Below, in pieces: positions 7,130-42,932 of a DNA stretch of 64,000 nt. The stretch lies in IMG/VR virus record IMGVR_UViG_3300046517_002304, positions 434,001 to 498,000 of that record. One strand, written 5' to 3'. A program made the translations under genes and the position numbers. How positions within the stretch are numbered: the first letter of the stretch is position 1; each line of letters begins with the position of its first letter. The notes below the pieces were generated by a model. The model saw only the letters and a program-made list of their open reading frames with translations, was not told the origin of the DNA and ran no database searches.

Positions 7130-7163
7130 ACTATACGACAAAAATTATAAAAGGGAAGTAAAA
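7130..7163 (-). promoter_or_regulatory. promoter class TTTTACTTCC-N18-TATAGT (copy 1)
   Basis: Same 10-mer and 18-nt spacing at 10383-10416 and 42899-42932. Confidence 0.7.
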
Positions 7164-7213
7164 TCTTCTAAAATAATGAAAAAATAGCAAAATATCGCAC
7201 GCTATATTATCTT

Positions 7214-8386
7214 GTGTACAAATCATACAAGATAGAGCTAGCCCCAAACAACAAGCAAAAGACACGATTCTATCAATGTGCCGGTACAGCTAGATTCATA
7301 TTTAACTGGGGATTATTTAAGATTTCATCCGCTTACAGCAAAGATAAAACAAAAATAACGACATTTGAATTAAGTAATCAACTAACTCAACTCAAAAAAA
7401 CAAAAGAATATATTTGGTTAAAAGAAATTTCTTCTTGGGTACCGATTTATGCCTTGCAAAATCTTAATTCGGCATTCAAAAATTTTTTCCGAAATTGCAA
7501 GCAAAATAAAAAGGGCAAAAAAGGCTTCCCTAAGTTTAAACAAAAAGGCAAAGCCTTAAATAACTTTACCGTGAGCGATGTGTTCTACGGCCCAAAACAC
7601 GTTAAGCTACCAAGGATAGGTAAAATACGACTCAAGGAACATGGTTACATTCCAGCTAACTCTAAAGTCGTCAATGCAACAATAACTGAACATGCGGGAC
7701 GATGGTTCATATCAATGCTAATAAATGAACCAGAGCCAAATTTTCAAGGTGCCAAAGACAAATACTCGCAAGTAGGCGTTGATCTAGGAATTAAAACACT
7801 TGCTGTAATTAGTGACGGACAAGAATTTCAGAGTCCTAAGCCACTTAAAAAGCACACTAAAAAACTCAAAAAACTACAACGAAAACACGCTAGATGTAAA
7901 GGAGTCAAAAACAGAGAAAAAGCAAGAAAAAAACTGGCAAAATGCCATTATCGCGTAACATGTATTCGCAAGGATACATTGCATAAAATTACTACACACT
8001 TAACGAAAACCAAGTCAAGAATAGTAATTGAAGATTTAAACGTTTCGGGAATGATGAAAAATCATAAGTTGTCAAGAGCAATCTCAGATTTAGGCTTCTA
8101 TGAATTTCGCAGACAGCTTGAGTATAAAGGAAGATGGTATAATTGTGAAATTATACTGGCCGATAGATTTTTTCCATCTAGTAAAACTTGTCCGTGTTGC
8201 AACGATATTTATAAGGACTTAACACTTGATCAAAGAGAATGGAATTGTGCCAACTGTAATACCCTGAACCTAAGAGATTCAGCCGCAGCAAAAAACCTAG
8301 AAGTCTATCCTGAAAAACACGCACACAAATATAATAAACAAAGTACCGTGAGTTCCACGGAAGCTGACAAAGTGTCTACGACTTAG
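7214..8386 (+). CDS. tnpB: RNA-guided endonuclease TnpB
   Basis: N-terminal HTH YKIELAPN; RuvC-I GVDLG, RuvC-II IVIEDL, zinc finger CPCC...CANC, RuvC-III RDSAAAKNL. Confidence 0.95.
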   Translation: MYKSYKIELAPNNKQKTRFYQCAGTARFIFNWGLFKISSAYSKDKTKITTFELSNQLTQLKKTKEYIWLKEISSWVPIYALQNLNSAFKNFFRNCKQNKKGKKGFPKFKQKGKALNNFTVSDVFYGPKHVKLPRIGKIRLKEHGYIPANSKVVNATITEHAGRWFISMLINEPEPNFQGAKDKYSQVGVDLGIKTLAVISDGQEFQSPKPLKKHTKKLKKLQRKHARCKGVKNREKARKKLAKCHYRVTCIRKDTLHKITTHLTKTKSRIVIEDLNVSGMMKNHKLSRAISDLGFYEFRRQLEYKGRWYNCEIILADRFFPSSKTCPCCNDIYKDLTLDQREWNCANCNTLNLRDSAAAKNLEVYPEKHAHKYNKQSTVSSTEADKVSTT

Positions 8387-8426
8387 GAAAAGAAAGCTCT
8401 GGCTTACAATGGGTAAGCGAAACTGG
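7214..8426 (+). mobile_element. solo tnpB element (IS200/IS605/IS607-derived, no tnpA)
   Basis: tnpB ORF followed by hairpins typical of the right end/omega-RNA; right end tentatively at GTAAGCGAAACTGG (8426); left end not identifiable. Confidence 0.6.
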
Positions 8427-8446
8427 CTTTTATGATTAAGTAATTA
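8344..8446 (+). ncRNA. putative TnpB omega/reRNA 3' scaffold plus guide
   Basis: Hairpins CCGTG-AGTTC-CACGG (8346-8360) and GCTTAC-AATGG-GTAAGC (8402-8418) overlap and follow the tnpB 3' end; boundaries inferred. Confidence 0.45.
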
Positions 8447-8821
8447 AGCAGGTAAAGTACCGTCACTCTTAAGGAGCGATAATTTTTGCAAAACTTCTTT
8501 TCGCATGATTTTGACGCTTGTCGGAGCATCAATCCCAATTCGCGTTGAATCCCGAGAAACTCTGACACATGTAATGCCAACATCTATATCAGCACCACCA
8601 TCATCAAGCTTTAGCTGTACGCTATCTTTAGGATTCAGCGTAAATTCATGCCATCCACCTTCTGATATTTCGAAATCAGGGAAGATAACTTGAGGGTGAG
8701 CGCTAATACCCAAATGAGCTTGGCCATTCCTAGCGGAAAAACAAATCAACGTAACGTCCGCAATATTAGCGCCTGTAGACAACTTGATCTCTTCTCCGGC
8801 TTTCCTCGTCAAAACCAACAT
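8444..8821 (-). CDS. csrA: CsrA/RsmA-family translational regulator, tandem two-domain form
   Basis: Starts MLVLTRKAGEEI, ends RIGIDAPTSVKIMRKEV; 125 aa, about two CsrA units. Confidence 0.85.
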   Translation of the reverse strand: MLVLTRKAGEEIKLSTGANIADVTLICFSARNGQAHLGISAHPQVIFPDFEISEGGWHEFTLNPKDSVQLKLDDGGADIDVGITCVRVSRDSTRIGIDAPTSVKIMRKEVLQKLSLLKSDGTLPA

Positions 8822-8844
8822 GGCTTTTCCCTTTCCTTGGATTA

Positions 8845-9987
8845 TTATCGGAATTTTTTGTCGGCAACTGACGGAATCGCTTCATGGTCTTCTAAGTCAG
8901 ATTCTCTCAGAACAAGCTGAAGAAGGCTAAGCATAACAAAATAGTCGCGCTTCAAAGTCTTTTGTTTCACACCCTTAATTTTCGTTTCAAGGTCAGAACG
9001 AATATCTCTGATCTGCTTGGTGGAAAGAGGACGACCCTTTCCAGTTCTTGCGCCAAGTGTTTCATTTACTTCACCGATTACATCTGCCGTAATCGTCTTG
9101 TTGCCACTGGCCTTATTTAACGCCGCCATTCTCTCTTTGGCAGTGCTTAAGTCTGACGATGTGCTTTTCAGAACCTCCGTAGACTTCTTGAGGATACCGC
9201 TTGCCTCTGCTTTTCGGGAAAGCGGAGCACGTTTAACCATCACCTCTGCTACTTCAACATCAGTTTGAGCCTGCTCAACCTTTTCCTTCAGAGTCTCCAC
9301 TTGATCTATGGCGCTTTGAAGCCTGTTGGCATAATCCTTCTCCACCAAATTTCGAGCAAAGTCTATTACTGATTTAATCTTAGAAGAATTTGTCTTCAAC
9401 AACTGCAAGGCAGAACTACGGTTAATTATTCCAGAATTAAGAGCCTCCAATGCATACCTCGGTAAATTACCGATGCTGATTGTTTGAGAAACCCAACTGG
9501 GCGATGTGTCAAATATTCCAGCGATCTGGTCCCGAGTAAATGCCTTTTCGCCTTTTTCATTTGTCTCATTATCCAATCGCATACAAGCTTCAATACGTTC
9601 TATCTCTGTTAAGTCTACTCTCTCCAAATTATCGGAGTAAGCAATTCCAAGTGCGGTCATATCATCGCACTCAAAACACTTAACGTCTACGTTCGCAAAA
9701 ACCTCTTTCGCGGGCAACTTCTTCTGATGCTGCTGAGAATAACACGACTCTCCATCTTCTAGAAGCTTATAAATAGATCGTAAGCGACGTTCCCCACCAA
9801 GAAGCAGGTATTCGTTGTTTAATTTTCTAACGATGAGAGGATAAAGCAACCCTTGTGCGCAAATACTAGTTCTTAACGACTTCATCCTTTCGCTATTAAA
9901 AACAGTTCTCGCATTCTGCAAACTACCTCTATTAATAATCTTGATTTCGCCAACCGACAACTTCAGATGTTTAACGCTGCTTTCCAT
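8845..9987 (-). CDS. ParB/Srx-domain protein with HTH and long coiled coil
   Basis: GLLYPLIVR, LLGGERRLRS, DNLERVDLTEIE, SWVSQTISI. Confidence 0.85.
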   Translation of the reverse strand: MESSVKHLKLSVGEIKIINRGSLQNARTVFNSERMKSLRTSICAQGLLYPLIVRKLNNEYLLLGGERRLRSIYKLLEDGESCYSQQHQKKLPAKEVFANVDVKCFECDDMTALGIAYSDNLERVDLTEIERIEACMRLDNETNEKGEKAFTRDQIAGIFDTSPSWVSQTISIGNLPRYALEALNSGIINRSSALQLLKTNSSKIKSVIDFARNLVEKDYANRLQSAIDQVETLKEKVEQAQTDVEVAEVMVKRAPLSRKAEASGILKKSTEVLKSTSSDLSTAKERMAALNKASGNKTITADVIGEVNETLGARTGKGRPLSTKQIRDIRSDLETKIKGVKQKTLKRDYFVMLSLLQLVLRESDLEDHEAIPSVADKKFR

Positions 9988-10032
9988 CTTTGTTCCTTTC
10001 CATGGGCCAGAAATTTCAATCTGAACGATTCA

Positions 10033-10359
10033 TTAATGGTCTAAATCATAAGCAGAATAACCAAATCCACCCGTAGCCTGTCCAGAATTCATGTGGCTAG
10101 AATGACTGCCTGAATGACTGCCTGGATGAATACCAGTAATCCCAACTCCTCCAACTGCGCCATGCGTCCCCTGCAACGGATACTTAGGAGTAGGCACTGT
10201 AGCAACTTCTTTTTTCGGAAGAGTCGGCTGATGCTTCGGATCAGTCGGAAAAATAACTTTGCCACAACCAGAACAAACAACCCCAACATCAAGATTAATT
10301 TTATATCCGGTAACATCTTTACGGTGCGTTTGACAGTTAGGACAAAAAATTGCTTGCAT
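10033..10359 (-). CDS. zinc-ribbon protein with Gly/His/Ser-rich tail
   Basis: CPNC...CSGC; likely start ATG 10359. Confidence 0.65.
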   Translation of the reverse strand: MQAIFCPNCQTHRKDVTGYKINLDVGVVCSGCGKVIFPTDPKHQPTLPKKEVATVPTPKYPLQGTHGAVGGVGITGIHPGSHSGSHSSHMNSGQATGGFGYSAYDLDH

Positions 10360-10382
10360 ATTTCGTTCGTTTCCTGTGAAGA

Positions 10383-10416
10383 ACAATAGGCCAAAATGCG
10401 ACAAAAGGAAGTAAAA
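10383..10416 (-). promoter_or_regulatory. promoter class TTTTACTTCC-N18-TATTGT (copy 2)
   Basis: Exact motif and spacing; heads the Zn-ribbon/parB/csrA operon. Confidence 0.7.
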
Positions 10417-10454
10417 AATGGAAATTTTGTGAAAATCACCATAATTTACACTGT

Positions 10455-10808
10455 ATGAGCGATTTTACAACATGTCCATATAGAAGTCAAGGCCAAAATG
10501 GCGATATTGTCTGTAATCTGGCGGCTTCAATTATCAAAAGCTCTGATAACTCCCTTTGCGTCATAAACGACACTGTATGCCAAGCATGCTATGAGACAAA
10601 TGAAATTCCTAACGAAAAAAAAATAAATACAATAGTAGCAAGAGTACTCCAAGTGGCGGCTGGTCAAATCATCAAAAGAAATGAACCACCAGATGAAGTG
10701 CAAAGAGCAAATGACTTACTGCAATACATAAAAGATCAACTGCCAGAAAAATGCAACTGCGGGAACAAGCGAAAAACCATTATTAGAAAAATAGGAAAAA
10801 TACGATGA
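10455..10808 (+). CDS. Cys-rich hypothetical protein
   Basis: 117 aa; CPY...C...C...CxxC...CNC. Confidence 0.75.
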   Translation: MSDFTTCPYRSQGQNGDIVCNLAASIIKSSDNSLCVINDTVCQACYETNEIPNEKKINTIVARVLQVAAGQIIKRNEPPDEVQRANDLLQYIKDQLPEKCNCGNKRKTIIRKIGKIR

Positions 10809-11044
10809 GCGAATTTGATTTTGTTATTGCGCAGGCTAAAGGAAATTGCGGCGGGTCTGTTCTTTATAAATGTACCTTAAGCCAAGTGGACGGTAGCACT
10901 AATTGGCAACAAATTTCAGGTAGTTGCTCGGGCACATGTATACAAGTAGGTAAAAGTTGCGGGCAACAAAATATCAGCGTATTAGACAACTGCACTAATA
11001 ATAACGTGGGCCAAGAGGGTAGCGTCGGATGTATCTGTTCCTAA
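10805..11044 (+). CDS. small Cys-rich protein (8 Cys in 79 aa)
   Basis: ATGA overlap with the upstream stop; G/S/N/Q/C-rich. Confidence 0.7.
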   Translation: MSEFDFVIAQAKGNCGGSVLYKCTLSQVDGSTNWQQISGSCSGTCIQVGKSCGQQNISVLDNCTNNNVGQEGSVGCICS

Positions 11045-11045
11045 G

Positions 11046-12170
11046 ATGTTAAAACAAAATAAAAATATATCAGAGTTAATTAATGACTACACAAAAATAT
11101 GCGATACTCTACTTTATACTTCACCAGAGCAAATACAAAAAACGACCAGCCATCTCCAACAAAGTATAAGTAGGCATTTTGGCTACACCGGTAAAATCCA
11201 CACAAAAGACGACTTATCTATAAAGAACGATTGGCTTAATAAGAGCAGGCCGCACTTTCCGGCCAAGACATCTGGAACAACATCCGGCCAATCATTCAAC
11301 TACTTGATTGACTCACAATTTTATCAATTCGTAGAGTTTAATTGCCGCTATCAAAAAATAATAGACGAATTCAAGGTTAATTGCCAAAACATCCTGTTCT
11401 TACTAAAAACACAAACAGGCAAAAAACAAAACATAAAAAATAAAAACAACGCTCCATCCCTAAACTCTCATGGAACAACAGGAACATATACTCATTACCT
11501 AGAATGGTCAAATAACCTAGTAGATGATATGGATATCATCACAAAATATCTTGATGACAATAAAATTGATGTCGTGCTAACGGACGGATCTGTAGTAAAT
11601 GTTCTAGCCAGGTATATTAAGAAACACAATCTAAAAAATAAAATATGCACACTTTTATCCAGCACAAACGAAAAGTTAAATTCAGAAGATGCCAACTTTC
11701 TTTTATCTAACGGAAATATCAATTACTGGTGCGACCACATGAGATGCTGGGATGGCGGCGCGGCATTTATGACTTGTCCTTTTTACACGCGCCATTTGTT
11801 AGAGAATTTATCTTACGTTTCCTCAAAAGATGAAAAACTAATATCTACTGATTACTTCAACCTAGCATCACCGTTTATAGACTACTGGAATGGAGATTAC
11901 TGTAGTCTGGACGATAATTATCAATTATGCGCTTGCGGAAGATGGTATAGAAACTTTGAACTATCAAGATGCAGGGATTGGTCAGTTCACGGAATAACAA
12001 GTACAGAAATCAAAAATAGAATACAAGCACTAAAAATACATGGCATTAGACAAGTGAGATGTGACGACCGAAATATTACAATTATATCACATCAACCAAT
12101 AAGCGCTAATAATCAACAAAAAATATTAGAACAACTAACGAACTTCACGATTAACTTTGTTAATGAGTGA
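11046..12170 (+). CDS. ANL-superfamily adenylate-forming enzyme (phenylacetate-CoA ligase/CapK-like)
   Basis: KTSGTTSG P-loop, LISTDYFNLASPFIDYWNGD, CACGR. Confidence 0.8.
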   Translation: MLKQNKNISELINDYTKICDTLLYTSPEQIQKTTSHLQQSISRHFGYTGKIHTKDDLSIKNDWLNKSRPHFPAKTSGTTSGQSFNYLIDSQFYQFVEFNCRYQKIIDEFKVNCQNILFLLKTQTGKKQNIKNKNNAPSLNSHGTTGTYTHYLEWSNNLVDDMDIITKYLDDNKIDVVLTDGSVVNVLARYIKKHNLKNKICTLLSSTNEKLNSEDANFLLSNGNINYWCDHMRCWDGGAAFMTCPFYTRHLLENLSYVSSKDEKLISTDYFNLASPFIDYWNGDYCSLDDNYQLCACGRWYRNFELSRCRDWSVHGITSTEIKNRIQALKIHGIRQVRCDDRNITIISHQPISANNQQKILEQLTNFTINFVNE

Positions 12171-12824
12171 GTAGTATACCTTTTTCAAATCTTCAAGCTT
12201 TGTCACGAAATGAATATTATCATTACCGTTATAACGGTTCCAAGTAACCGGTGGCCCAATAACTATAGTTGGTGTATCAGTCATAGCCGCTAGATGAGCG
12301 GTTCCGGTATCAGTGCTTATATTCAATTTGGCGGATGCCAACCATTTAAACTTTTCACAAATACTATCGCTACATTTATTGTGTAAATTATCAACCTGAC
12401 TTATTTCATAAGACGAAAGATTAATCAGTTTTTCACCAGACAACATTTGAAAAATATCACGCAAAACACTTTTATGCAATCTTCTAGAAAGATTATGCTC
12501 AAATATAGTCTCACCTGTGCTAATTAACGATACTGTGATATAATCCTTTTTCTTAAAGTTATCAAGTAAATTTGACTTGACATATGGCAAATAATCTGTG
12601 TGCCACCAATGAGAGCGAACGGAGATAGGCTTATCACAACTCTCCACTAAGGTAATGTCATTCTCAAACAACGACAATATCATAGAAATGGTGCACCTAT
12701 ATTCTGGAAGCCAATGAGTCATAAAGCGTTTGTCTGTGGACTGACAATACTGAATTGTACTAATAAAATCTCCCAGCCCAGGATCTTTAGGAGTATAGCA
12801 CGGCTCTATCATAACATCAAACAA
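12135..12824 (-). CDS. GT9-like glycosyltransferase
   Basis: ISTDTGTAHLAAMTDTPTIVI. Confidence 0.75.
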   Translation of the reverse strand: MFDVMIEPCYTPKDPGLGDFISTIQYCQSTDKRFMTHWLPEYRCTISMILSLFENDITLVESCDKPISVRSHWWHTDYLPYVKSNLLDNFKKKDYITVSLISTGETIFEHNLSRRLHKSVLRDIFQMLSGEKLINLSSYEISQVDNLHNKCSDSICEKFKWLASAKLNISTDTGTAHLAAMTDTPTIVIGPPVTWNRYNGNDNIHFVTKLEDLKKVYYSLINKVNREVR

Positions 12825-13522
12825 CCATAATTCGTATACTGATTATAAGCTTTATCATGACCCTTATTAATCCCACAAAAATGAGTGGCAAACTGAGATG
12901 GGTTGTATTCGGGGTACGAAATAGAAACCGAAGCTTGTGATATTTGTATATAATTATTAGTATTTAAAATAATGGTAGCCAAAACTCCTTGATCGTCATT
13001 CCAATGCCGCCAAAAATTACCTGACTCTCTACTCAAAACATCACTAATAGCCTGTTGCAAATCAAATCCAGGCGGGTATCCTACAATGCCTGAGTTTAAT
13101 CTCATCCCTTTCGGGACATACTGATCAAATTTGCCAAGATTTCTTTTTCTACCATCACAAACTAAAAACTTACTGTCGGCAAGAAACTCATCAATTTCGG
13201 GTAATTTCTTAAACCATAAAATATCATTATCTAAAATTATCTCATGTGTATCCATTCGCATTCGTGGTGGATATAACTTCCACTTACTGTCAGAAGGAGG
13301 GTATTTAATCTCATTATTATAAGAAACATTATGAAGTGGCACCCCCAAAGATGCTATCTCATTTACCTGAGATTCATCTAAGCTATTATGAGCAATTACA
13401 TAGTCAAAGGTATCAGTATAAATATTAGTAAATGAATTAACCGCTTCTTTAAGTGTCCTAAAACCAAGCGCGTGAACCTGTCCTATAGTCCAACGAACCA
13501 AAGGCTTCATTGTTTCCGTCAT
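12809..13522 (-). CDS. GT-A fold nucleotide-sugar transferase-like protein
   Basis: ILDNDILW (DxD), LNSGIVG, DDQG. Confidence 0.65.
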   Translation of the reverse strand: MTETMKPLVRWTIGQVHALGFRTLKEAVNSFTNIYTDTFDYVIAHNSLDESQVNEIASLGVPLHNVSYNNEIKYPPSDSKWKLYPPRMRMDTHEIILDNDILWFKKLPEIDEFLADSKFLVCDGRKRNLGKFDQYVPKGMRLNSGIVGYPPGFDLQQAISDVLSRESGNFWRHWNDDQGVLATIILNTNNYIQISQASVSISYPEYNPSQFATHFCGINKGHDKAYNQYTNYGCLML

Positions 13523-17932: not shown

Positions 17933-17934
17933 TG

Positions 17935-22547: not shown

Positions 22548-23369
22548 TTAATACAAAGGGGAGTAAATGTCAAGATAGTATTTCTTTGGAGTTTTGCCAG
22601 ACTTCATATCGTGCGATAAATCAAATACATACTTCTCAAACTGATGATTGAACTCTTCGTATGAAGAAAAACCGTAATATTCCTTCACTACTTGTAGTGG
22701 CCCCATCGCACAAAAAGACTCCATGTCTTTCGCTGGAAATTCTTTTTTCAGAAAAAGACACAACATTGTGCTTTGCACTCTATTCCATTTGTCAATATTT
22801 TTAGAATTAACATCTTGCTGAAGAATTTCATCCGCCGTGCAATGCTCATCTTTCAACATGTCCTCTGCCTGCATAAGAGTTTCATATATGTCTGATTCGC
22901 TTCCATTCAAAACAGAAATGCCAGTAATCATCCACTTAGGAAACTTTATCTTATTCGCTATTTCATATTCACGCAAACATGCTTCCGTCAATTTTTCTGA
23001 TAAATCTGAGTCTCTCCAATCGCCATCTACGCAAGTCCAAATAACAGAAATATCTTTTCCATCATGTATTAACGAAGCGCGATAAACTGACTTGTCAAGG
23101 TTAAAAAACTTCTTATATAGATCCTTATTGTCAATACAAATAACCATACACTTTCTTGAGAATTTAATATCATCAAATCCCCATCGCTTAAATATAGACT
23201 CTTTCATAAACTCTACGTGCTGAGACAAATACTCAGATTTGCCTTCGTGGTTTGATAAGATTTCAAAATTATTCGTCTCATTAGAATAAAGCTTAACCTT
23301 CTGATCGCCAATTTCTACATGAGTATCTGCCGCAACAAACAAAAGTGCGAAAGCAAGCAAGTTATACAT
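22548..23369 (-). CDS. secreted protein, possibly a degenerate gluzincin-like fold
   Basis: Signal-like N-terminus; SEKLTEACL...PKWMITGIS resembles HExxH...PxWxxEG without the ligands. Confidence 0.4.
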   Translation of the reverse strand: MYNLLAFALLFVAADTHVEIGDQKVKLYSNETNNFEILSNHEGKSEYLSQHVEFMKESIFKRWGFDDIKFSRKCMVICIDNKDLYKKFFNLDKSVYRASLIHDGKDISVIWTCVDGDWRDSDLSEKLTEACLREYEIANKIKFPKWMITGISVLNGSESDIYETLMQAEDMLKDEHCTADEILQQDVNSKNIDKWNRVQSTMLCLFLKKEFPAKDMESFCAMGPLQVVKEYYGFSSYEEFNHQFEKYVFDLSHDMKSGKTPKKYYLDIYSPLY

Positions 23370-24009
23370 TTACGCTACTCTCCTTAAAAAAAGATTGATT
23401 TGTTCTAAAAAAGTGAATTGACCTTGGACTAGATACATCAAAAATATCATGCTGAGAATCAGCATAAACATTTTTAATAATATCTCTAGCCTCAGATGCA
23501 ATCTGTGAAATACGTGAATCACAAACACCAATTTTACTCCCGATTTCCTTCATAGATAATCCCAAAACATAATATGAGTATATGATCTTCTGTTGAATTG
23601 GTGTTAGATGCTTCATAATTTTCTTATATGAATCATCATTGTCCACTCTAGAAATTCCATCATCTTTTGCTATTAAATTCTCGCTTATGGGTGAAGACTG
23701 ATGAAAATTAATGCTGTAGGTTGGGACATCAAGCGACCAAGATGTTATTCTATGTCTTTTTCTACTTCCGCTATACTTCCGTAAAAAATCATTGATTTCG
23801 CCATGTATTCTATACCGAGCATACATGGCGAAAACGCCTTTGGTTTCATCAAACTTAGTTGCTGCATCAATTAATCCCATATATGCAGCAGATTTTAATT
23901 CCGATAATTGTATCCCTCTAACACACCCAGACTTTCTTTTTTTAGCAATTTTATCCGCAAGGTGCTTGTACTCCACAACTAATTTGTTTCTTTCTTCAAT
24001 ACTTCTCAT
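23362..24009 (-). CDS. RNA polymerase sigma factor, FliA/WhiG-like
   Basis: Region 2 ELKSAAYMGLIDAATKFD...YARYRIHGEINDFLR; region 4 LSMKEIGSKIGVCDSRISQI. Confidence 0.9.
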   Translation of the reverse strand: MRSIEERNKLVVEYKHLADKIAKKRKSGCVRGIQLSELKSAAYMGLIDAATKFDETKGVFAMYARYRIHGEINDFLRKYSGSRKRHRITSWSLDVPTYSINFHQSSPISENLIAKDDGISRVDNDDSYKKIMKHLTPIQQKIIYSYYVLGLSMKEIGSKIGVCDSRISQIASEARDIIKNVYADSQHDIFDVSSPRSIHFFRTNQSFFKESSVNV

Positions 24010-25073: not shown

Positions 25074-25147
25074 TCAGCACCTAAGGTCCATACGCCAATT
25101 CTACCACAATTTCAAAGTACCGCAAGCGGATTTTTTACTGCAAAAAA

Positions 25148-36348: not shown

Positions 36349-36928
36349 TAGGCACCTTATTTTCGCTTGTTAAGGATTTAGGTGAGGGAGTAATCGCCTT
36401 CTTAGGCGAAAGTTTCGCTATAATAGAACGTTCACTAAACGCAGGCTTACTCGTAACTTCAGATACATCAGAAACGGCAGCTATTACAGAATTAATAATT
36501 TCAAACCACCTGTCTTTATGTGGTTGTATTTTTCTCTTCTTGGCTCTGACCTTCAACTGAACATGAAAGCCTTTGGCAAGAAATTCTCTTAGTTTATTAA
36601 TCTGAACATCTAAGTCATGTTGTTCAATATTAGGCGAAAACAATAACTCTTTTTCCGAAACAGAAACTTGACTTTTCCGTTTCTGCTTTTCCTTAAGACA
36701 CTGTTCGTATTTAAACTTTCCATAATCTGCAACAATGCATATTGATACATTATCCTGTTTCGTAATTTCAATTAAGTCCAATCCGAAACCTTTTGCATAT
36801 GTCAAAGCATCTTGCTTTGACATAACGCCTATCTGCTCCCCGTCTTTAACAACACGGATCTTAAATGCGTAAATAGAATGGTTAATGTTGTTAGTCGCGT
36901 TTTTTGCAGAAAAATCTGAATTTCTCAA
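36338..36928 (-). CDS. infC: translation initiation factor IF-3
   Basis: QIGVMSKQDAL...GLDLIEI...DYGKFKYEQ...KELLFSPNIEQHDL; likely TTG start at 36928, 7 nt after AAGGA. Confidence 0.9.
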   Translation of the reverse strand: MRNSDFSAKNATNNINHSIYAFKIRVVKDGEQIGVMSKQDALTYAKGFGLDLIEITKQDNVSICIVADYGKFKYEQCLKEKQKRKSQVSVSEKELLFSPNIEQHDLDVQINKLREFLAKGFHVQLKVRAKKRKIQPHKDRWFEIINSVIAAVSDVSEVTSKPAFSERSIIAKLSPKKAITPSPKSLTSENKVPNGG

Positions 36929-36938
36929 AGATTGTTCC

Positions 36939-37226
36939 TTAGAAGTACCCTTCTCGCTCAAGTTCCACGAACCTGAATTCACCAGAATTCATCATATCAG
37001 TAGCGATGGAAAGAGTCAATGCGGATTCTACGTAAATTTCAAAAATACCAGGCTGAAAAAAACTTCTAATAGTACAATTTGGAGCAAACGATTTTACTAA
37101 GTACGATCCATAATCTTGCTCCACTCCAAGCTTTGTGCAGACATAAAGCTTCCCTGGTCTAAACTTAACCTCGCGACCGTTCCAAGTAGTCGTTTCACTT
37201 TTTCTGAAAAAACCATCACTCTTCAT
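36939..37226 (-). CDS. possible stand-alone subtilase pro-domain-like (I9-type) protein
   Basis: FRPGKLYVCTKLGV...FEIYV...SGEFRFVE pattern. Confidence 0.4.
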   Translation of the reverse strand: MKSDGFFRKSETTTWNGREVKFRPGKLYVCTKLGVEQDYGSYLVKSFAPNCTIRSFFQPGIFEIYVESALTLSIATDMMNSGEFRFVELEREGYF

Positions 37227-37241
37227 AAAGACCTAACTTTC

Positions 37242-38864
37242 TTAAATAATTTTTTGCAACTTAGATGTCATACGCTCTAGTGTAGCAGAACGATCTTTTT
37301 TGTCAAGAACAACATTGATAATATACAAATCTTTACTCAATAAAGCTTCAGAGAAGGCAGAGTCTAATTCTGTTTCGGTGTTAACAAGCCGCCCGACACC
37401 ACGACCAATAATCTGAGGCAACAAGTGGTACTGCCAATTAGGAATATCGTTAAAACTACCGTCAATCAAAAATCGCTCTACCGTATAGCCGCCGTTATTC
37501 AGCACAACAATAATAGGATTTAGCTTATTGCTAGCTATCGTTGATATTTCCATTCCAGTCATCTGAAATGCTCCATCGCCAACCAATACAATCGGTCTAA
37601 CATCCGGTTTAGCAATCTGAACACCCAGGGCAGCAGGAATAGAGAATCCCATGGATGTATAAAATGCCTGTGATAAAAAGTTGTTACTGTGATGAACAAC
37701 TAGCTCATTAGAGCCGAATAAGCTGTCGCCTATGTCTGCAATTATTGCCATATTCTTGTCTAAAACAGCATTAATTTTTTCAAATAATCTCTTGACCGTA
37801 ATTTTCTCATTCTTAGGAGAAAAAACTGCTCTTGTCTTCATTTCGCCAACAATCGGAATTCGATCAGAAGAAATATTAGACTTAATTAACCCATTAACAA
37901 AATCTTGGAAAAGAACATTTTCATAGTAATGATTTCGCACTCCCATTTTTTCAGTAGTGCAAAATATCGTTCTATCTTTACGAAGAACAGATGGCTTAAA
38001 TCCAAAGTTAATGTCAGTAATCATCACGCCCAACATAATTAAGCAATCTGATTCCTCAACCTTTTGCTTAACTTCTGGGCTACTAGCATCCCCACAATAA
38101 ACACCTATAGATATCGGATGATTTTCATTTGTCAAACTCTTACTCAACATAGTTGTAGCAATGGGAATATTATACTTTCTAGCAAACTTGGTAATGACTT
38201 CGCCCATACCAAATCTAGCTAATTCAATGCCCGCCAAAATTACAGGGTTTTTACTTGAGTTGATCCAATTAATAGATTCCTGCAAAGCTTCCGCTAAATT
38301 TATCTTATCACTCTCTGTAGCTTTAGGAGAGCCGACCGTAAATGCATCATAGCTAATAGTTGTGTCCACCATATCTCTGGGGACTTCAATATAAACAGGT
38401 TGCTTATGCTGCTTCATGGCCAGAAGCACCCGATCAATTTCATAAGCCGCCATTACCGGATTATCTAATACACAAGAAGCGCAGGTCACATGTTTAAAAA
38501 TCTCAAACTGAGTATCATAAGAACCAACAGCATGATGCAGCGTCATTCCGCCGGCTCTCTCCTTTTTCCCGGGAGAACCGCTAATAACAACAACCGGAGA
38601 TTTTTCTGCGAAAGCGCCCCCGATAGAATTTAATAGTTTAAACCCACCGACGCAATAAGTGGTGCATACACAGCCAATACCGTTAACTCTGGCATATGCG
38701 TCAGCGGCGAACCCAGCGCACTGTTCGTCAGTAGTGCCGATTACAGGAAGAGATTTAGAAAACTGATTATACAAATTAAGAACGAAATCGCCAGGAACTC
38801 CAAAAATATGCTTTACACCACACTCTTTAAGACGAGAAATCAAAAATTGTGCAACTGTTGGCAT
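37242..38864 (-). CDS. TPP-dependent 2-keto-acid decarboxylase (indolepyruvate/phenylpyruvate/pyruvate decarboxylase family)
   Basis: FGVPGDF, DEQCAGFAADAYAR, LHH, GDGAFQMTGME...NNGGY TPP motif. Confidence 0.92.
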   Translation of the reverse strand: MPTVAQFLISRLKECGVKHIFGVPGDFVLNLYNQFSKSLPVIGTTDEQCAGFAADAYARVNGIGCVCTTYCVGGFKLLNSIGGAFAEKSPVVVISGSPGKKERAGGMTLHHAVGSYDTQFEIFKHVTCASCVLDNPVMAAYEIDRVLLAMKQHKQPVYIEVPRDMVDTTISYDAFTVGSPKATESDKINLAEALQESINWINSSKNPVILAGIELARFGMGEVITKFARKYNIPIATTMLSKSLTNENHPISIGVYCGDASSPEVKQKVEESDCLIMLGVMITDINFGFKPSVLRKDRTIFCTTEKMGVRNHYYENVLFQDFVNGLIKSNISSDRIPIVGEMKTRAVFSPKNEKITVKRLFEKINAVLDKNMAIIADIGDSLFGSNELVVHHSNNFLSQAFYTSMGFSIPAALGVQIAKPDVRPIVLVGDGAFQMTGMEISTIASNKLNPIIVVLNNGGYTVERFLIDGSFNDIPNWQYHLLPQIIGRGVGRLVNTETELDSAFSEALLSKDLYIINVVLDKKDRSATLERMTSKLQKII

Positions 38865-38875
38865 TATACTCTCTC

Positions 38876-39676
38876 CTATGTAAGAGATTCCGATGTTGGT
38901 GATTGTTGAACCTTGATGACAAAACTGCCATCTGTAGGAAACCTACGAACCCATTCCACGCCTTCGCCAATAAAACATCCATATTCACTAGGAGTAAAAC
39001 TAGTAAAGCTTGGTGTTGAAATTGATAATGAATTTACCATACTCATAGATGTCGTCATCTTTAATAACTTAAACTCAAAATTAAAACACCCAGGAACACA
39101 AGTATCATTAGAGAGCCATTCATAAACAAGTTGGCTTTTAGTTAAAACATTAGTAGAAACTGTTCCATCAACCTGAAGCTGATCTTCGTAAGTTAACTCC
39201 GTCTGAGCAACAGAATTCAAAACCCTAAATATTTTTAAACAAGTGCCCTTTTTATAATCGCCAACTGGTGTACCATTATACCCTCTAAGAACTTGCACCA
39301 ACTTAAGATTTTCGTCAAACCCAGTAATTAGCATCTGCTCTGGATTACGAACTCTACTCACAACTATAATATCGCCAACCAACGCCTGCTGAAAACCAAT
39401 ACCGTCTGCTAAAGCAAAATAAGTGTCTGTAGACGTAATAGCTGATTTAAGCTTCGCATTCGCCCACATACTCGCTTCTAATACAAGTCCAGTTAAATCT
39501 ATCGGACCATTACAATCTGAAATAGCAACTTTAAACGGAGGCTTGGTGTCATGCTGTTTGATCTGGAAATCTGGGCAACTTCCATCACAATTAAACTCAT
39601 CGGGACACCCGCCATTACAATTAGTTGAACTAGCAAAACTGTTTAAATTACTTGAATTACTTTGAGAGCATGTCAT
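38876..39676 (-). CDS. BppU-N-like virion/baseplate protein
   Basis: FQIKQHDTKPPF...GPIDLTG; TATATA 5 nt before ATG. Confidence 0.55.
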   Translation of the reverse strand: MTCSQSNSSNLNSFASSTNCNGGCPDEFNCDGSCPDFQIKQHDTKPPFKVAISDCNGPIDLTGLVLEASMWANAKLKSAITSTDTYFALADGIGFQQALVGDIIVVSRVRNPEQMLITGFDENLKLVQVLRGYNGTPVGDYKKGTCLKIFRVLNSVAQTELTYEDQLQVDGTVSTNVLTKSQLVYEWLSNDTCVPGCFNFEFKLLKMTTSMSMVNSLSISTPSFTSFTPSEYGCFIGEGVEWVRRFPTDGSFVIKVQQSPTSESLT

Positions 39677-39699
39677 ACCATTATATATCTTGCACTAAA

Positions 39700-40245
39700 T
39701 CAAGAAAATAATTCTGGCACTTGCAACTCCATAATCCCTATCTTATCTTTAACCCAATGAAGGTTGCCGCCATATCTCTCTATTTTAACGCTATGATAAG
39801 ATTTGCTTAAAAACTCAAAAGTTTTTTTATAGTCTTTAGGCAGACCATAAGGCTTTTTAGGTGCATATACAATCCGCCGAATGCCACGATCAAGTATGTT
39901 TACCACCGAGTCAGGATGAGGAATAGTAGTAATATACAAACTAAACGCAAAAAAATTAGTTTCCTTATCAGAAAGCGCTCTTAAAACCTTGATTTCAGCA
40001 GGAACGATAAAATCATAAATTTTTGGATTGTCCCAAGACAATTTAAACGGATTGGCAGCATAAGTTGGGACATCACCTATCGGATAGGTGAAAGCCATAG
40101 CTCTTATTTCTTCCTTATCCGCTAAAACAGCTCCAGACTGGCAATAAGGATCTACCGATGCCCATGACGCAATTACAGCGTGCATCATCATCCGATGATC
40201 TAATGCGACAATATCCCTGGCATTCTTTTCCTGAAACTGAAACAT
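39700..40245 (-). CDS. dCMP-deaminase-fold protein lacking zinc ligands
   Basis: SVDPYCQSGAVL, VPAE (for HAE), LYITTIPHPDS (for PCxxC), GIRRIVY. Confidence 0.75.
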   Translation of the reverse strand: MFQFQEKNARDIVALDHRMMMHAVIASWASVDPYCQSGAVLADKEEIRAMAFTYPIGDVPTYAANPFKLSWDNPKIYDFIVPAEIKVLRALSDKETNFFAFSLYITTIPHPDSVVNILDRGIRRIVYAPKKPYGLPKDYKKTFEFLSKSYHSVKIERYGGNLHWVKDKIGIMELQVPELFS

Positions 40246-41411
40246 TATTCCGTCTTCAGCAGGTAAGACTTAGTTTCTTCCGTAAGCTCTTTAAGCCACT
40301 TAACATAGGGCGTTCCACCAGTACCGGTAGGATTATCACACTTTTTCTGGATATAGTCAACAGCATACCCAAAGTGAATTTCCCGAAATCGGCATAACTG
40401 AAGAATGATGTTATTATAAGTAGCTCTTACATACTTGTCAAGTTTATTATTAATAATTCCATCTCTGATATTAACCGATGATCCTTCAAGGTGCGAAACA
40501 AACCCACGGTGATTCCTGGGCATATACTTTCTCATATCATCAAGATGATGAGTCAAAATAGACTGCTGATGCTTAACTCCGAAAGCTGCCAATACAGCAG
40601 GAACAATAGAACTTTGAGCACCCGTTTCGCCTCTAAAAGACTGCTCTTTTGCACCACTAAAGAACGAACAGCTCGGAACATTTTCATACACTACATTTTC
40701 AAAACCAAAAATATAAGGTCTAACCTTACGGAAATAAACATCTGGGCTACACTTTTCTGGCATCCTTTCTAAAACCGTATTAATCCCTTTAAAAGAACTG
40801 CATATAACCTCTAGATTCTCGGCAAAGAAATCATCATTTGGCGCTTTACCGCTATCAAGAAACTCCGTTAAATTATAAATGCTTTTCAGCAATCTCCCTG
40901 CCCTAGCTTCAATTTCAACATGAACTAGAATAAACCAATCTTCATCATAAATATTATTAAATTTTTGAATTAACTGAATATTACCAAGCGATATATCAGA
41001 ATTCTTATCGATTCTCTTCCAGTTGTTCAATGCATAATCAGCATACGACAAAATCGGCGGTCTACCAACAATCTCTGACAAAGCACAAAGAGGACGAGCA
41101 ATCGCACTAGGGATATGCTTAACAACTCCAGCTTGGCCGTGCACATAAGCAGATGCAAAATAAGCATAAATCATCCTAAGTCGGTTTAAAACACCGCGCT
41201 CTTTATGCTCTTTAAGAGCCGAATAAGAGATATCGTATATCGGCAAGGTGTCTAGGGTAATTCTTACCTTACTGGACTGAACATGAGAAGGTAATTCATA
41301 GGCCACCTTATCCAAATAACTAAACCCAGAACCACTGGGCAATCGCTCAATCGGGTCTGGGCTAGCAAGAAATCCTCTGTCTTCATGAACGGTGGGATAA
41401 AATTCAGTCAT
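40245..41411 (-). CDS. indoleamine 2,3-dioxygenase family heme enzyme
   Basis: RPPILSYADY, DEDWFILVHVEIE, VRPYIFGF, FRGETGAQSS, proximal His in FREIH, GTGGTP. Confidence 0.92.
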   Translation of the reverse strand: MTEFYPTVHEDRGFLASPDPIERLPSGSGFSYLDKVAYELPSHVQSSKVRITLDTLPIYDISYSALKEHKERGVLNRLRMIYAYFASAYVHGQAGVVKHIPSAIARPLCALSEIVGRPPILSYADYALNNWKRIDKNSDISLGNIQLIQKFNNIYDEDWFILVHVEIEARAGRLLKSIYNLTEFLDSGKAPNDDFFAENLEVICSSFKGINTVLERMPEKCSPDVYFRKVRPYIFGFENVVYENVPSCSFFSGAKEQSFRGETGAQSSIVPAVLAAFGVKHQQSILTHHLDDMRKYMPRNHRGFVSHLEGSSVNIRDGIINNKLDKYVRATYNNIILQLCRFREIHFGYAVDYIQKKCDNPTGTGGTPYVKWLKELTEETKSYLLKTE

Positions 41412-41800
41412 TGTGATTTAGACCTTAAAAAAGAAGGCGGGGAATTTGCGAGTGAAACTATACCGTCCATAGCAATATACTTTATTTTTTTTCTTTTGCC
41501 GATATACCGAGAAATAGGCCACAAATTGTCAAATTCTACCCAATAATAGCTATCATCGGCATACTTCAACAACTTTACAGCGCCGGAATCACCCTGATAA
41601 AAATCTGGGGCTAAAATCGCCATCTTATTAAAAAATACTTTATAACAAGACCCTTTGCACCAACTATAAACAAAAGCACCAAAATTCTCAGCATTAACGC
41701 CGTCAATAATTTCTTGCGACCAAAACCCTATATTATGCTTATGAAAAACCTGAAACGGGCGCATCGGGAGTGCTACTGGCATTTTACTTTCTCTGACCAA
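41408..41800 (-). CDS. hypothetical protein
   Basis: 130 aa ORF. Confidence 0.65.
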   Translation of the reverse strand: MVRESKMPVALPMRPFQVFHKHNIGFWSQEIIDGVNAENFGAFVYSWCKGSCYKVFFNKMAILAPDFYQGDSGAVKLLKYADDSYYWVEFDNLWPISRYIGKRKKIKYIAMDGIVSLANSPPSFLRSKSQ

Positions 41801-42360
41801 GCATAGTGGGTGCCCTTTTTACAAATAAGATTGATGCTGTTCGGGTTCTTATTAGAAATAAACCAACTACATTCTTCAAGACTACAATTTCGGTGCTTTC
41901 CTGTTGATACTTGAATTTTTTCTTTTATCCTACTAACCTGTTCTGGATATTTCTCCAACGCATCGCAATAATCAATACGCTTGTCAAAAGCGAACAACTT
42001 TTGTTCACTGAATAATCTAATTTTGGCTGAATGTAAATCGCTAAGAACTTCAAAGTCACAATTCAATTTAGCACTCTTCATAATTCTATCTAAATACTCA
42101 ATTTTGTCAATAGCTTTATAGAAAAACGTGGCGTACGTTGTTTCACCAGTAAAATCTCTAAAACAAGTCAGCAATTCGTACTTTTGATTTTTATAATCAC
42201 TGTAAAATGGCTGCAATAGGCATAAAAAAACCAAAATGCGCGATTCTTTCTCGCCTAAATAAATCTCCATCCACTTTTTATCTTCGGGCAGGAAGTCATA
42301 ATGAAGTGAGTTTTTGGAGTAAATTCTTAAAAATACTAAGTCTTTTTCACTAACACGCAT
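41773..42360 (-). CDS. hypothetical protein
   Basis: 195 aa ORF. Confidence 0.7.
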   Translation of the reverse strand: MRVSEKDLVFLRIYSKNSLHYDFLPEDKKWMEIYLGEKESRILVFLCLLQPFYSDYKNQKYELLTCFRDFTGETTYATFFYKAIDKIEYLDRIMKSAKLNCDFEVLSDLHSAKIRLFSEQKLFAFDKRIDYCDALEKYPEQVSRIKEKIQVSTGKHRNCSLEECSWFISNKNPNSINLICKKGTHYAWSEKVKCQ

Positions 42361-42886
42361 CGGCCAGTTCTGGTGTTTTCTTTGTTTCTTTAACCTTAAC
42401 CATTAATGCAGTCCAATCTAACGGAATTCCAACAACAACATCCAAATAAATCAAAAGTATTCCGCCGATTCTATTTTGAGGAATCCGCTTTGCCTCACAT
42501 TCCAGCATCAATTTACGAAGGAGTACCATATCATAGTATTTCCCATCACTAAAAAGCTCTCCACACAGCCTAAAATCAGGATTTTTATCAGCCATCAACT
42601 TAATGGCCTCATAAAACAAATCCACGGCCGTCACAAACTCAATCTGTTCAATAATATCAATTTTTTCTTGGGAAATCAACGCTCGCTGCGGAATAGCTCC
42701 GCCGCAATGCCATTTACGCCCTTCAAAAAAGTGCAAAATACATTCCTTCGCATGTTCATCAATTTCCGCCATTAAGTCAATTACGTTTTGCTCAGCGTCT
42801 GTCCATTCATCATCAAAATCGTCATAATCGTCGTCGTTAAAAACAGGGCTTTCGGAAATCGGCATTTTGTTCTCCGTGATGTTCAA
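42350..42886 (-). CDS. hypothetical protein with acidic N-terminus
   Basis: 178 aa ORF, first gene after promoter copy 3. Confidence 0.7.
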   Translation of the reverse strand: MNITENKMPISESPVFNDDDYDDFDDEWTDAEQNVIDLMAEIDEHAKECILHFFEGRKWHCGGAIPQRALISQEKIDIIEQIEFVTAVDLFYEAIKLMADKNPDFRLCGELFSDGKYYDMVLLRKLMLECEAKRIPQNRIGGILLIYLDVVVGIPLDWTALMVKVKETKKTPELADAC

Positions 42887-42898
42887 ATCGTTTACTTA

Positions 42899-42932
42899 AC
42901 AATACTCCAAAAATTTCAAAAAGGAAGTAAAA
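42899..42932 (-). promoter_or_regulatory. promoter class TTTTACTTCC-N18-TATTGT (copy 3)
   Basis: Exact motif and spacing. Confidence 0.7.

What the first reader, a model, noticed from the sequence alone, without database searches (positions are those of the whole stretch)
7130..42932. Non-canonical promoter class TTTTACTTCC-N18-TAT(A/T)GT in three copies
Seen: the identical 10-mer lies exactly 18 nt before TATWGT at 7130-7163, 10383-10416 and 42899-42932. All are on the minus strand, in divergent intergenic gaps, heading the nucleoid-protein gene, the parB/csrA operon and the operon leading to IDO. Read as sigma70, TTTACT would be 21 nt from the -10, too far. Inference: target of a phage activator (compare T4 MotA middle promoters), the FliA-like sigma at 23362, or a host alternative sigma.
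Basis: partly seen in the sequence, partly recalled or inferred. Interest (0 to 1): 0.62.

Follow-up and report, generated by a model that had tools for sequence, protein, structure and literature searches.

The report
Small phage promoter family, unusual −35
A 511-kb soil phage carries four near-identical promoter-like sites that pair a normal-looking −10 box with an unusual conserved box where the −35 should be; this points to a small gene set switched on by an unidentified, probably phage-made, specificity factor.

Summary
The composite TTTTACTTCC-N18-TATWGT occurs three times in the window and nowhere else in the 511,233-bp phage genome; shuffles give 0. The three sites share 26 fixed positions: TTTTACTTCC-Y-TTT-N6-TTTTG-N3-TATWGTT. 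A fourth site outside the window (genome 221372-221406, + strand) matches 24 of 26. Background begins at 20 of 26. Flanks and N positions are unrelated, which points to selection, not recent copying. All four sites point into a gene from a divergent gap. At the fourth, the −10 box ends six bases before an ATG that has no Shine-Dalgarno sequence, which fits a leaderless transcript. No TTGACA-like hexamer lies 15-19 nt upstream. The same genome has canonical TTGACA/TGnTATAAT promoters and a TAAr-N17-19-CCGATAw (sigma-28-type) class, which is the more natural target of the FliA-like sigma. No MotA or AsiA homologue and no phage RNA polymerase were detected. The motif is absent from IMG/VR, GTDB genomes, JGI metagenomes and the nearest relative, LR756511.1. 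My reading is a four-member promoter class read at −10 by host primary sigma, with a box-specific factor replacing the −35 contact. The factor is unidentified and no RNA data exist.

The parts
7130..7163 (-). Site 1: TTTTACTTCC box (7154-7163), conserved TTT and TTTTG spacer blocks, TATAGT −10-like hexamer (7130-7135). It heads a monocistronic unit.
   Evidence: 26/26. An overlapping TTTAGA-N17-TATAAT match at 7172-7144 is present only at this site.
10383..10416 (-). Site 2: same architecture with TATTGT. It heads the Zn-ribbon / ParB-like / CsrA operon.
   Evidence: 26/26. ATG 10359 lies 24 nt downstream behind an ACAGGAAAC Shine-Dalgarno-like word.
42899..42932 (-). Site 3: same architecture with TATTGT. 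It heads the operon that runs to the IDO gene.
   Evidence: 26/26. ATG 42865 lies 34 nt downstream. The divergent lipoprotein-like ORF starts at 42944, only 12 nt from the box.
6529..7014 (-). Gene driven by site 1: 161-aa protein with a Lys-rich N-terminal tail and a predicted 116-nt leader.
   Evidence: translation. No Pfam, NCBIfam, PHROG or PDB match. Single-sequence fold is poor, pLDDT 53. The leader is not unusually structured, z = −0.95.
6478..6511 (-). Intrinsic-terminator-like hairpin (15 bp stem plus T run) that closes the site-1 unit.
6449..6476 (-). Canonical TTGATT-N16-TGgTATAAT promoter directly after that terminator; an example of the host-type class in the same genome.
10033..10359 (-). 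First gene of the site-2 operon: 108-aa zinc-ribbon-like protein.
   Evidence: (weak Zn-ribbon hits).
8845..9987 (-). ParB-like gene (ParB_N; weak HTH_ParB/KorB hits).
8444..8821 (-). CsrA-family gene.
   Evidence: PF02599, E 8e-19.
42350..42865 (-). First gene of the site-3 operon: acidic 171-aa protein of unknown family.
40245..41411 (-). Indoleamine 2,3-dioxygenase gene, downstream in the site-3 operon.
   Evidence: PF01231, E 9e-71.
23362..24009 (-). FliA/WhiG-like sigma factor (regions 2 and 4); candidate reader of the box, but better matched to the CCGATAw class.
   Evidence: Its operon has a canonical TTGCGG-N16-TGgTAGAAT promoter at 25098-25125.
50688..50715 (-). Sigma-28-type promoter-like site TAAA-N17-CCGATAA in an intergenic gap, 31 nt before a start codon.
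51204..51232 (+). Second CCGATAA site, in the divergent gap next door, just before the 816-aa gene at 51239.
7214..8386 (+). TnpB (IS605 OrfB / Cas12f-like) gene divergent from site 1; single copy in the genome.
10462..10490 (-). TTGACT-N17-TAAAAT sigma-70-type match about 50 nt upstream of site 2 on the same strand; a possible tandem promoter, lying inside the start of the plus-strand ORF.

Best explanation
The sites form a four-member family of phage promoters.

Anatomy, taking the hexamer as −12..−7:
- a primary-sigma-type −10 hexamer, TATWGT (TATTAT at the fourth site);
- a TTTTG block at −20..−16;
- a TTT block at −29..−27;
- an invariant asymmetric box, TACTTCC, inside TTTTACTTCC at −40..−31, where TTGACA would normally sit.

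T runs start about every 10 nt, at motif positions 1, 11-12 and 20-21. That predicts a bent, A/T-rich face.

Inferred mechanism. Host core RNA polymerase with the primary sigma reads the −10. The missing −35 contact is supplied by a sequence-specific factor bound to the TACTTCC box. This would be a class-II or sigma-appropriation-like activator, most likely encoded by the phage. The four units would then fire together at a defined stage. The units are the Lys-rich protein gene, the Zn-ribbon/ParB/CsrA operon, the operon running to IDO, and a membrane-protein gene at genome 221412.

What is shown: the anatomy, the copy number, the position-specific conservation, the placement in front of genes, and the existence of other promoter classes in the same genome.

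What is inferred: that transcription starts about 7 nt after the hexamer, that an activator and not a sigma reads the box, and that the factor is phage-encoded.
For: Non-randomness and selection:
- 3 exact composites against 0 in shuffles, and a unique family of 4 in 511 kb with a gap down to background.
- Identity is 0.92 at fixed positions against 0.33 at N positions and 0.31-0.40 in the flanks.

Promoter context:
- All four sites sit in divergent gaps and point into the adjacent gene. The hexamer lies 24, 34 and 116 nt before the ATG at the three window sites.
- At the fourth site the hexamer ends 6 nt before an ATG that lacks a Shine-Dalgarno sequence, so the predicted +1 is the A of the ATG.
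- Site 1 heads a unit closed by a strong terminator-like hairpin. That hairpin is followed by a canonical promoter for the next gene.

The −10 and −35 regions:
- The hexamers keep T-12, A-11 and T-7 and match TATAAT at 4-5 of 6 positions.
- No TTGACA match above 3 of 6 at spacers of 15-19.

Dependence on host polymerase:
- No Pfam-detectable single- or multi-subunit phage RNA polymerase.
- Canonical TTGACA-N16/17-(TGn)TATAAT promoters are present in the genome.

The FliA-like sigma has a better candidate class. TAA-N17-19-CCGATAw gives 24 sites, 9 of them intergenic (38%) against a 6.6% intergenic fraction, and about 12 lie within 45 nt of a start codon.

Specific to this phage. The tight pattern has 0 hits in IMG/VR. 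The relaxed pattern gives only singleton chance hits in GTDB genomes and JGI metagenomes. The nearest relative has none at 3 or fewer mismatches.

Precedent, from established knowledge and PMC2988021: in T4 middle promoters an asymmetric box replaces the −35 while the sigma-70 −10 is kept. The box here fits the MotA-box skeleton WWWTnCTT.
Against: - There is no transcript evidence. Only DNA runs hold this phage, so no start site is mapped.
- No candidate activator was found. MotA and AsiA are absent by profile, and the neighbouring small proteins gave nothing.
- The G at hexamer position 5 in 3 of 4 sites, the conserved T after it and the TTTTG-N3 block are not typical primary-sigma features. 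They could equally mark the −10 region of a dedicated sigma.
- Strict conservation at 24-26 of 26 positions is tighter than in the roughly 60 degenerate T4 middle promoters.
- With only four sites and no relatives carrying the motif, no covariation or footprinting test was possible. Contigs from four other soil and rhizosphere runs showed no differences over 6000-11900 wherever they covered it.
- The gene calls used for the intergenic statistics are my own crude ORF calls.
Confidence: 0.42

Rival explanations
1. The phage FliA/WhiG-like sigma (window 23362-24009) reads the motif directly. Region 4 would bind ACTTCC and region 2 would bind TATWGT(T) across an 18-bp spacer.
For: The protein has sigma regions 2 and 4 and is expressed from a host-type promoter, so it could drive a later class. 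An 18-bp spacer is within the geometry of the sigma-70 family. The atypical G and T in the −10 region and the very tight conservation suit a dedicated sigma.
Against: Its best family matches are FliA/WhiG. The genome holds a distinct, intergenically enriched TAAr-N17-19-CCGATAw class that is near-canonical for sigma-28. One sigma is unlikely to read both TAAA/CCGATAA and ACTTCC/TATWGT. The relative LR756511.1 has an orthologue of the sigma (32% identity) but no copy of the motif.
Confidence: 0.12
2. A different dedicated sigma reads both halves. It could be an undetected, divergent phage sigma or a host alternative sigma.
For: The box sits exactly at −35 with fixed spacing. The −10 region carries conserved non-consensus bases. 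Phage sigmas can be too divergent for Pfam. A second, gp55-like sigma was detected only weakly (24.6 bits in Pfam, phrog_234 at E 1e-10).
Against: Only two sigma-like ORFs were found, and gp55-type sigmas lack region 4 and do not read a −35. The relaxed pattern gives only 5 singleton hits in 5 unrelated lineages across 185,579 species genomes, so no bacterium there shows a regulon of this exact shape. This test is weak because host regulons are degenerate and the host may not be sampled. None of the sigma consensus sequences I recalled for Bacillus and E. coli matches.
Confidence: 0.15
3. The box is an operator for negative control. The four units would be weak or −35-less primary-sigma promoters kept off, or tuned, by a repressor or nucleoid-type protein bound at −40..−31.
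For: Tightly conserved short boxes shared by a handful of promoters are typical of global repressors on plasmids and phages. One controlled operon encodes a ParB/KorB-like protein. Site 2 additionally carries an exact 11-mer repeated 102 nt upstream, next to a second promoter-like site.
Against: The box is asymmetric, and no inverted or direct repeat partner is shared by the four sites. Without a −35 or a TGn element the promoters would be poor even when derepressed. The conserved TTT and TTTTG blocks and the fixed 18-bp register to the −10 point to a contact made within the initiation complex.
Confidence: 0.1
4. Primary sigma acts alone. These would be −35-independent promoters whose phased T tracts and upstream A/T-rich DNA (UP-like) supply the strength. 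On this view the box is conserved through shared ancestry and no box-specific factor exists.
For: T runs are phased at about 10 nt, and there is a partly conserved A/T-rich stretch (TTTCA...AAAT) 13-15 nt upstream of the box at sites 1-3. The relative LR756511.1 has its own tightly conserved family of sigma-70-type promoters, so over-conserved promoter families occur in this group.
Against: N positions and flanks have diverged to random levels while TACTTCC stays invariant in 4 of 4 sites, which argues for base-specific reading. There is no TGn at −15/−14 to compensate for the missing −35.
Confidence: 0.08
5. The sites are not promoters. They would be an end of a mobile element, a partition or packaging site, or a chance repeat.
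For: Site 1 lies 51 nt from a TnpB gene. Site 2 lies next to a parB-like gene.
Against: TnpB is single-copy and absent from the other three sites. The motif is not palindromic as ParB-CTPase parS sites are. Shuffles give 0 matches. Orientation and distance to the downstream ATG are consistent at 4 of 4 sites. There is no Rfam hit in the window.
Confidence: 0.05

Closest known systems
Phage T4 middle promoters (MotA box plus sigma-70 −10; sigma appropriation by AsiA/MotA)
   Same: A host-type −10 is kept and the −35 is replaced by an asymmetric, phage-specific box. The host polymerase is reused. The box here (TTTT-A-CTT-CC) fits the MotA-box skeleton (a/t)(a/t)(a/t)T-G-CTT-tA at 7 of 10 positions, and an ACTT centre occurs naturally in T4 P46 (PMC2988021). 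This phage also has a T4-style gp55-like late sigma.
   Different: The box lies 18 bp from the −10 (centre about −35.5), not 12±1 bp (centre −30). No MotA_activ, MotCF or credible AsiA homologue was found. There are four near-identical sites, not about 60 degenerate ones. None of the sites has TGn.
Lambda CII-dependent promoters (pRE, pI, paQ) and Mu C-dependent late promoters (own knowledge, not checked in a paper here)
   Same: A very small set (three or four) of phage promoters with poor −35 hexamers share a conserved activator site overlapping the −35 region.
   Different: CII reads a TTGC-N6-TTGC direct repeat and Mu C reads a dyad-like site. The box here is a single asymmetric heptamer or decamer with additional conserved spacer blocks. 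No CII- or C-like protein was looked for by profile.
Bacillus phage SPO1 middle promoters read by the phage sigma gp28 (AGGAGA-N17/18-TTTNTTT; own knowledge)
   Same: A phage-specific −35 hexamer at a 17-18-bp spacing defines a temporal class on host core polymerase.
   Different: In SPO1 both halves differ from the host consensus and a phage sigma replaces sigma-A. Here the −10 still looks like a primary-sigma −10, and the only region-4-bearing phage sigma looks FliA-like.
Sigma-28 (FliA/SigD) promoters, TAAA-N15-GCCGATAA
   Same: It is an alternative class in the same genome, and the phage encodes a FliA/WhiG-like sigma.
   Different: The motif shares neither half with this consensus. A separate TAAr-N17-19-CCGATAw class exists in the genome.

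Membership tests
Canonical primary-sigma (sigma-70/sigma-A) promoter | −10 hexamer of TAnnnT type | tested here: met
   TATAGT, TATTGT, TATTGT, TATTAT.
Canonical primary-sigma (sigma-70/sigma-A) promoter | TTGACA-like −35 at 16-18 bp, or a compensating TGn at −15/−14 | tested here: not met
   Best match is 3 of 6 or fewer at spacers of 15-19. The TG lies 3 nt, not 1 nt, before the hexamer.
T4-type middle promoter (MotA/AsiA sigma appropriation) | MotA box (a/t)(a/t)(a/t)TGCTTtA | tested here: inconclusive
   The box matches the skeleton at 7 of 10 positions (WWWT-CTT), with A for G and CC for tA. That is low information, about 11 bits (for the consensus).
T4-type middle promoter (MotA/AsiA sigma appropriation) | Box positioned 12±1 bp upstream of the −10 | tested here: not met
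   The spacing is exactly 18 bp at all four sites (PMC2988021).
T4-type middle promoter (MotA/AsiA sigma appropriation) | Genome encodes MotA and AsiA | tested here: not met
   PF09114 and PF09158 give no match at E<=1. PF09010 gives 13.5 bits, E 0.03, below its cut-off and at the level seen in control genomes.
Sigma-28 / FliA promoter | TAAA at −35 and GCCGATAA at −10 | tested here: not met
   Neither half is present in the motif. Such sites occur elsewhere in the genome.
T4-type late promoter (gp55) | Extended −10 TATAAATA with no −35 requirement | tested here: not met
   The hexamers are TATWGT/TATTAT, and a conserved upstream box is present. A TAWATAAT class exists separately in the genome.
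Functional promoter (any class) | Transcript 5' end about 7 nt downstream of the −10 | not testable with these tools
   All six listed runs that hold this DNA are recorded as DNA. The geometry at the fourth site is only suggestive.
ParB parS / plasmid-type operator | Palindromic or repeated half-sites | tested here: not met
   No shared inverted or direct repeat around the box at the four sites.

The most novel reading that the evidence does not exclude
The box is read by a new kind of phage factor, unrelated in sequence to MotA/AsiA. This factor would take over the −35 position of the host primary-sigma holoenzyme with a strict 18-bp register. That would be an independent invention of sigma appropriation in a soil megaphage that also carries a T4-like gp55 late sigma and a FliA-like sigma, giving the phage four or more promoter classes on one host polymerase.
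Probability: 0.2. Interest if true: 0.65.

Novelty: new variant of a known kind. Interest (0 to 1): 0.42.

Why it matters
Huge uncultivated phages are known mostly as gene lists, and how they time expression is largely unknown. This genome appears to run several promoter classes on the host polymerase:
- canonical TTGACA/TATAAT promoters;
- a sigma-28-type class;
- a −10-only class;
- a very abundant TAGTTATCC element;
- this four-site class.

The four-site class is small, sharply defined and testable. Each box offers a clean mutational target, and the controlled genes suggest a host-takeover module: a Lys-rich DNA-binding-like protein, ParB, CsrA and IDO. If a new box-reading factor were found, it would add to the few known ways of redirecting sigma region 4. 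If not, this remains an ordinary example of phage-specific promoter architecture.

Tried and rejected
- **Comparative footprinting failed.** The search for related loci with the ParB-like protein and with the first site-3 protein found no relatives in IMG/VR. The loose pattern in IMG/VR returned only single chance hits and the tight pattern returned none.
- **Relaxed pattern in other collections.** GTDB genomes and JGI metagenomes gave 5 hits each, all singletons with unrelated contexts. Two pairs among the ten show the same sequence, so there are eight distinct sites.
- **Nearest relative.** LR756511.1 (595 kb; 159 of 877 proteins hit) has no copy at 3 or fewer mismatches. It also lacks the site-3/IDO cassette.
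- **Population variation.** Contigs from four soil and rhizosphere runs, laid on 5,901 letters as the operators' limit requires, showed no base differences over 6000-11900 wherever they covered it, apart from one 4-base deletion in one low-depth contig at 8017, inside tnpB. No RNA run holds the phage.
- **MotA/AsiA membership.** Rejected.
- **Phage RNA polymerase.** Not detected. The PF00940 search rang in none of the 14 control genomes, so it does not show absence of a T7-type polymerase, and divergent phiKZ-type subunits could also escape Pfam.
- **Divergent-promoter reading.** The reverse complement of the box contains TAAAAT at sites 1 and 3 but TAAAAA and TACAAA at the other two. The essential final T is lost, so I rejected a conserved opposite-strand −10.
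- **Shine-Dalgarno reading of the reverse complement (AAAGGAAGT).** Rejected, because the distances to the divergent start codons are 19-55 nt.
- **IS-end reading.** TnpB is single-copy and occurs only at site 1.
- **Candidate regulators nearby.** The 117-aa and 108-aa neighbours gave nothing usable.
- **Fold of the Lys-rich protein.** pLDDT 53, not searched further.
- **RNA checks.** No Rfam family in the window. The site-1 leader is not unusually structured.

Full report
**Source.** The window is bases 434001-498000 of a 511,233-bp IMG/VR virus record with direct terminal repeats, 39% G+C. DNA of this phage occurs at 35-100% of the sampled words in six soil and rhizosphere runs. No RNA run holds it. 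No close relative is present among the phage or plasmid records by megablast.

**Observation.** TTTTACTTCC-N18-TATWGT matches exactly at 7130-7163, 10383-10416 and 42899-42932, all on the minus strand. None of 100 dinucleotide-preserving shuffles gives a match. The whole genome holds only these three. The bare 10-mer occurs seven times against about three expected; the other four copies lack everything downstream.

Aligning the three sites shows further invariant blocks. The shared consensus is TTTTACTTCC-Y-TTT-N6-TTTTG-N3-TATWGTT, with 26 fixed positions.

Scanning the genome with it gives:
- three sites at 26/26;
- one at 24/26, at genome 221372-221406 on the plus strand, outside the window;
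- nothing at 21-23;
- counts at 20 or below that equal those of shuffled sequence.

So the family has four members, with a clear gap down to background.

**Selection, not copying.** Mean pairwise identity is:
- 0.92 at the fixed positions;
- 0.33 at the nine N positions;
- 0.40 in the 40 nt upstream;
- 0.31 in the 45 nt downstream;
- 0.28 expected from composition.

A recent duplication would have kept the N positions too. The slightly raised upstream value comes from an A/T-rich stretch (TTTCA...AAAT) 13-15 nt before the box at sites 1-3.

**Context.** Each site lies in a divergent gap and points into the adjacent gene.
- **Site 1** precedes a 161-aa protein (ATG 7014, 116-nt leader). A 15-bp terminator-like hairpin at 6511-6478 closes the unit. 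Directly after it comes a canonical TTGATT-N16-TGgTATAAT promoter for the next gene.
- **Site 2** lies 24 nt before a 108-aa zinc-ribbon-like ORF, which is followed by ParB-like and CsrA genes.
- **Site 3** lies 34 nt before a 171-aa acidic protein at the head of the operon that reaches the IDO gene.
- **The fourth site** precedes a 245-aa membrane protein. Its TATTAT ends at 221405 and the ATG starts at 221412, with no Shine-Dalgarno sequence between them. A start 7 nt after the hexamer would therefore be the A of the ATG, giving a leaderless mRNA.

This geometry is the best internal support for reading TATWGT as a −10 element. It is not a mapped start.

**What kind of promoter.** With the hexamer at −12..−7 the box spans −40..−31. 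No hexamer at spacers of 15-19 matches TTGACA at more than 3 of 6 positions, and the TG lies three bases, not one, before the hexamer.

The host plainly uses standard promoters, because the phage carries good ones:
- 6449-6476;
- 25098-25125, in front of the amidoligase-sigma operon;
- a perfect TTGACA-N17-TATAAT at 40413-40441.

No phage RNA polymerase is detectable by Pfam. The PF00940 search rang in none of the 14 control genomes and so does not show absence, and very divergent subunits could also escape.

**Which factor.** The phage has two sigma-like genes.
- The first is a FliA/WhiG-like protein with regions 2 and 4, at 23362-24009.
- The second is a gp55-like late sigma with region 2 only, at genome 95290-95760 (phrog_234, E 1e-10).

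The genome also contains a sigma-28-type class. TAA-N17-19-CCGATAw occurs 24 times, and 9 of these are intergenic (38%) where 6.6% is expected. About a dozen lie within 45 nt of a start codon; two are in the window, at 50688-50715 and 51204-51232. That class is the natural target of the FliA-like sigma, so I rate that sigma as an unlikely reader of the TACTTCC box. A gp55-type sigma does not read a −35.

MotA and AsiA are absent. By the review PMC2988021 the MotA box is (a/t)(a/t)(a/t)TGCTTtA, placed 12±1 bp from the −10, and is found in nearly 60 tolerant promoters. The box here shares the WWWT-CTT skeleton but sits 18 bp away and is almost invariant. The T4 system is therefore an analogy, not a family assignment.

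**Distribution.**
- The tight pattern is absent from IMG/VR.
- The relaxed pattern gives only singletons in 185,579 species genomes and in JGI metagenomes.
- The nearest relative, LR756511.1, shares 159 of 877 proteins, including both sigmas. It has no copy at 3 or fewer mismatches and lacks the IDO cassette.
- That relative has its own over-conserved TTGACA-N12-GTAGTAAGAT family.

The motif is thus specific to this phage lineage as sampled, and no comparative test was possible.

**Verdict.**
- About 0.8 that these are promoters.
- About 0.42 that they work through host primary sigma at the −10 plus a box-specific, probably phage-encoded, activator at −35.
- About 0.27 that a dedicated sigma reads both halves (0.12 for the FliA-like one).
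- About 0.10 for negative control at the box.
- Less for curvature-only or non-promoter readings.

It is a new variant of a known kind and of moderate interest.

Noticed in passing
Own genome about 250-420 kb (outside the window), mostly minus strand; e.g. genome 288214, 326029, 373145: A 12-13-nt element, tTAGTTATCC-r-T-w-A, occurs about 185 times (AGTTATCC) and is 7-fold enriched upstream of genes. 162 GTTATCC copies lie on the minus strand in this region. The T two bases after the CC is invariant. An ATG that opens an ORF lies exactly 10 nt after the CC in 46 cases and 13 nt after it in 15. The TAG or TGA inside the element often looks like the stop of the preceding gene. At about 260-275 kb it also occurs as inverted pairs. 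It could be a per-gene promoter, a processing site or a translation signal. It resembles a DnaA box (TTATCCACA).
   Followed up: partly
window 50688-50715 (-), 51204-51232 (+); genome 25215, 103893, 158196, 190484, 202858, 499884 and others: A sigma-28-type promoter class, TAAr-N17-19-CCGATAw, enriched about 6-fold in intergenic DNA. It is the likely regulon of the FliA/WhiG-like sigma. It is not enriched in the relative LR756511.1 (0 of 13 intergenic).
   Followed up: partly
Own genome 95290-95760 (+), locus L123:1327-1797: A gp55-like late sigma factor (phrog_234, E 1e-10; Sigma70_r2 at 24.6 bits) among what look like tail and structural genes. A −10-only word, TAWATAAT, is enriched in intergenic DNA: TATATAAT 12 of 29 and TAAATAAT 16 of 62 are intergenic.
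   Followed up: partly
window 10388-10398 and 10490-10500 (+): The exact 11-mer AGGCCAAAATG is repeated 102 nt apart. One copy overlaps the spacer and −10 of site 2. The other abuts the −35 of the TTGACT-N17-TAAAAT site at 10462-10490. It may be an operon-specific operator, or chance (roughly 0.1 expected).
   Followed up: no
window 7023-7031 and 10369-10377 (-): The same 9-mer, ACAGGAAAC, forms the Shine-Dalgarno region of the first genes behind sites 1 and 2. The site-1 leader holds several GGA words (e.g. ACAGGGAC). The phage encodes a CsrA homologue at 8444-8821, so CsrA control of these leaders is conceivable.
   Followed up: no
window 7214-8386 (+): A TnpB / IS605 OrfB (Cas12f-like) gene, single copy in the phage, with no Rfam-detectable omega-RNA family nearby.
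   Followed up: partly
window 40413-40441 (-): A perfect 12/12 TTGACA-N17-TATAAT lies inside the 3' part of the IDO coding sequence, aimed at the next gene (39700-40245).
   Followed up: no
window 10100-10124 (+): An exact tandem 12-mer (AATGACTGCCTG, two copies) inside the zinc-ribbon ORF.
   Followed up: no
LR756511.1 (loci L137-L166), e.g. 289110, 289697, 289888, 415292: The relative has about 10-12 copies of a tightly conserved sigma-70-type promoter, TTGACA(A)-N11-12-GTAGTAAGAT/AAAGT.
   Followed up: partly
window 6971-7015: Contigs from other organisms in the soil runs stick to the Lys/Ala-rich repeat coding region of the site-1 gene. The loose ends have high G+C. These are low-complexity cross-matches, not variants of the phage.
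   Followed up: no
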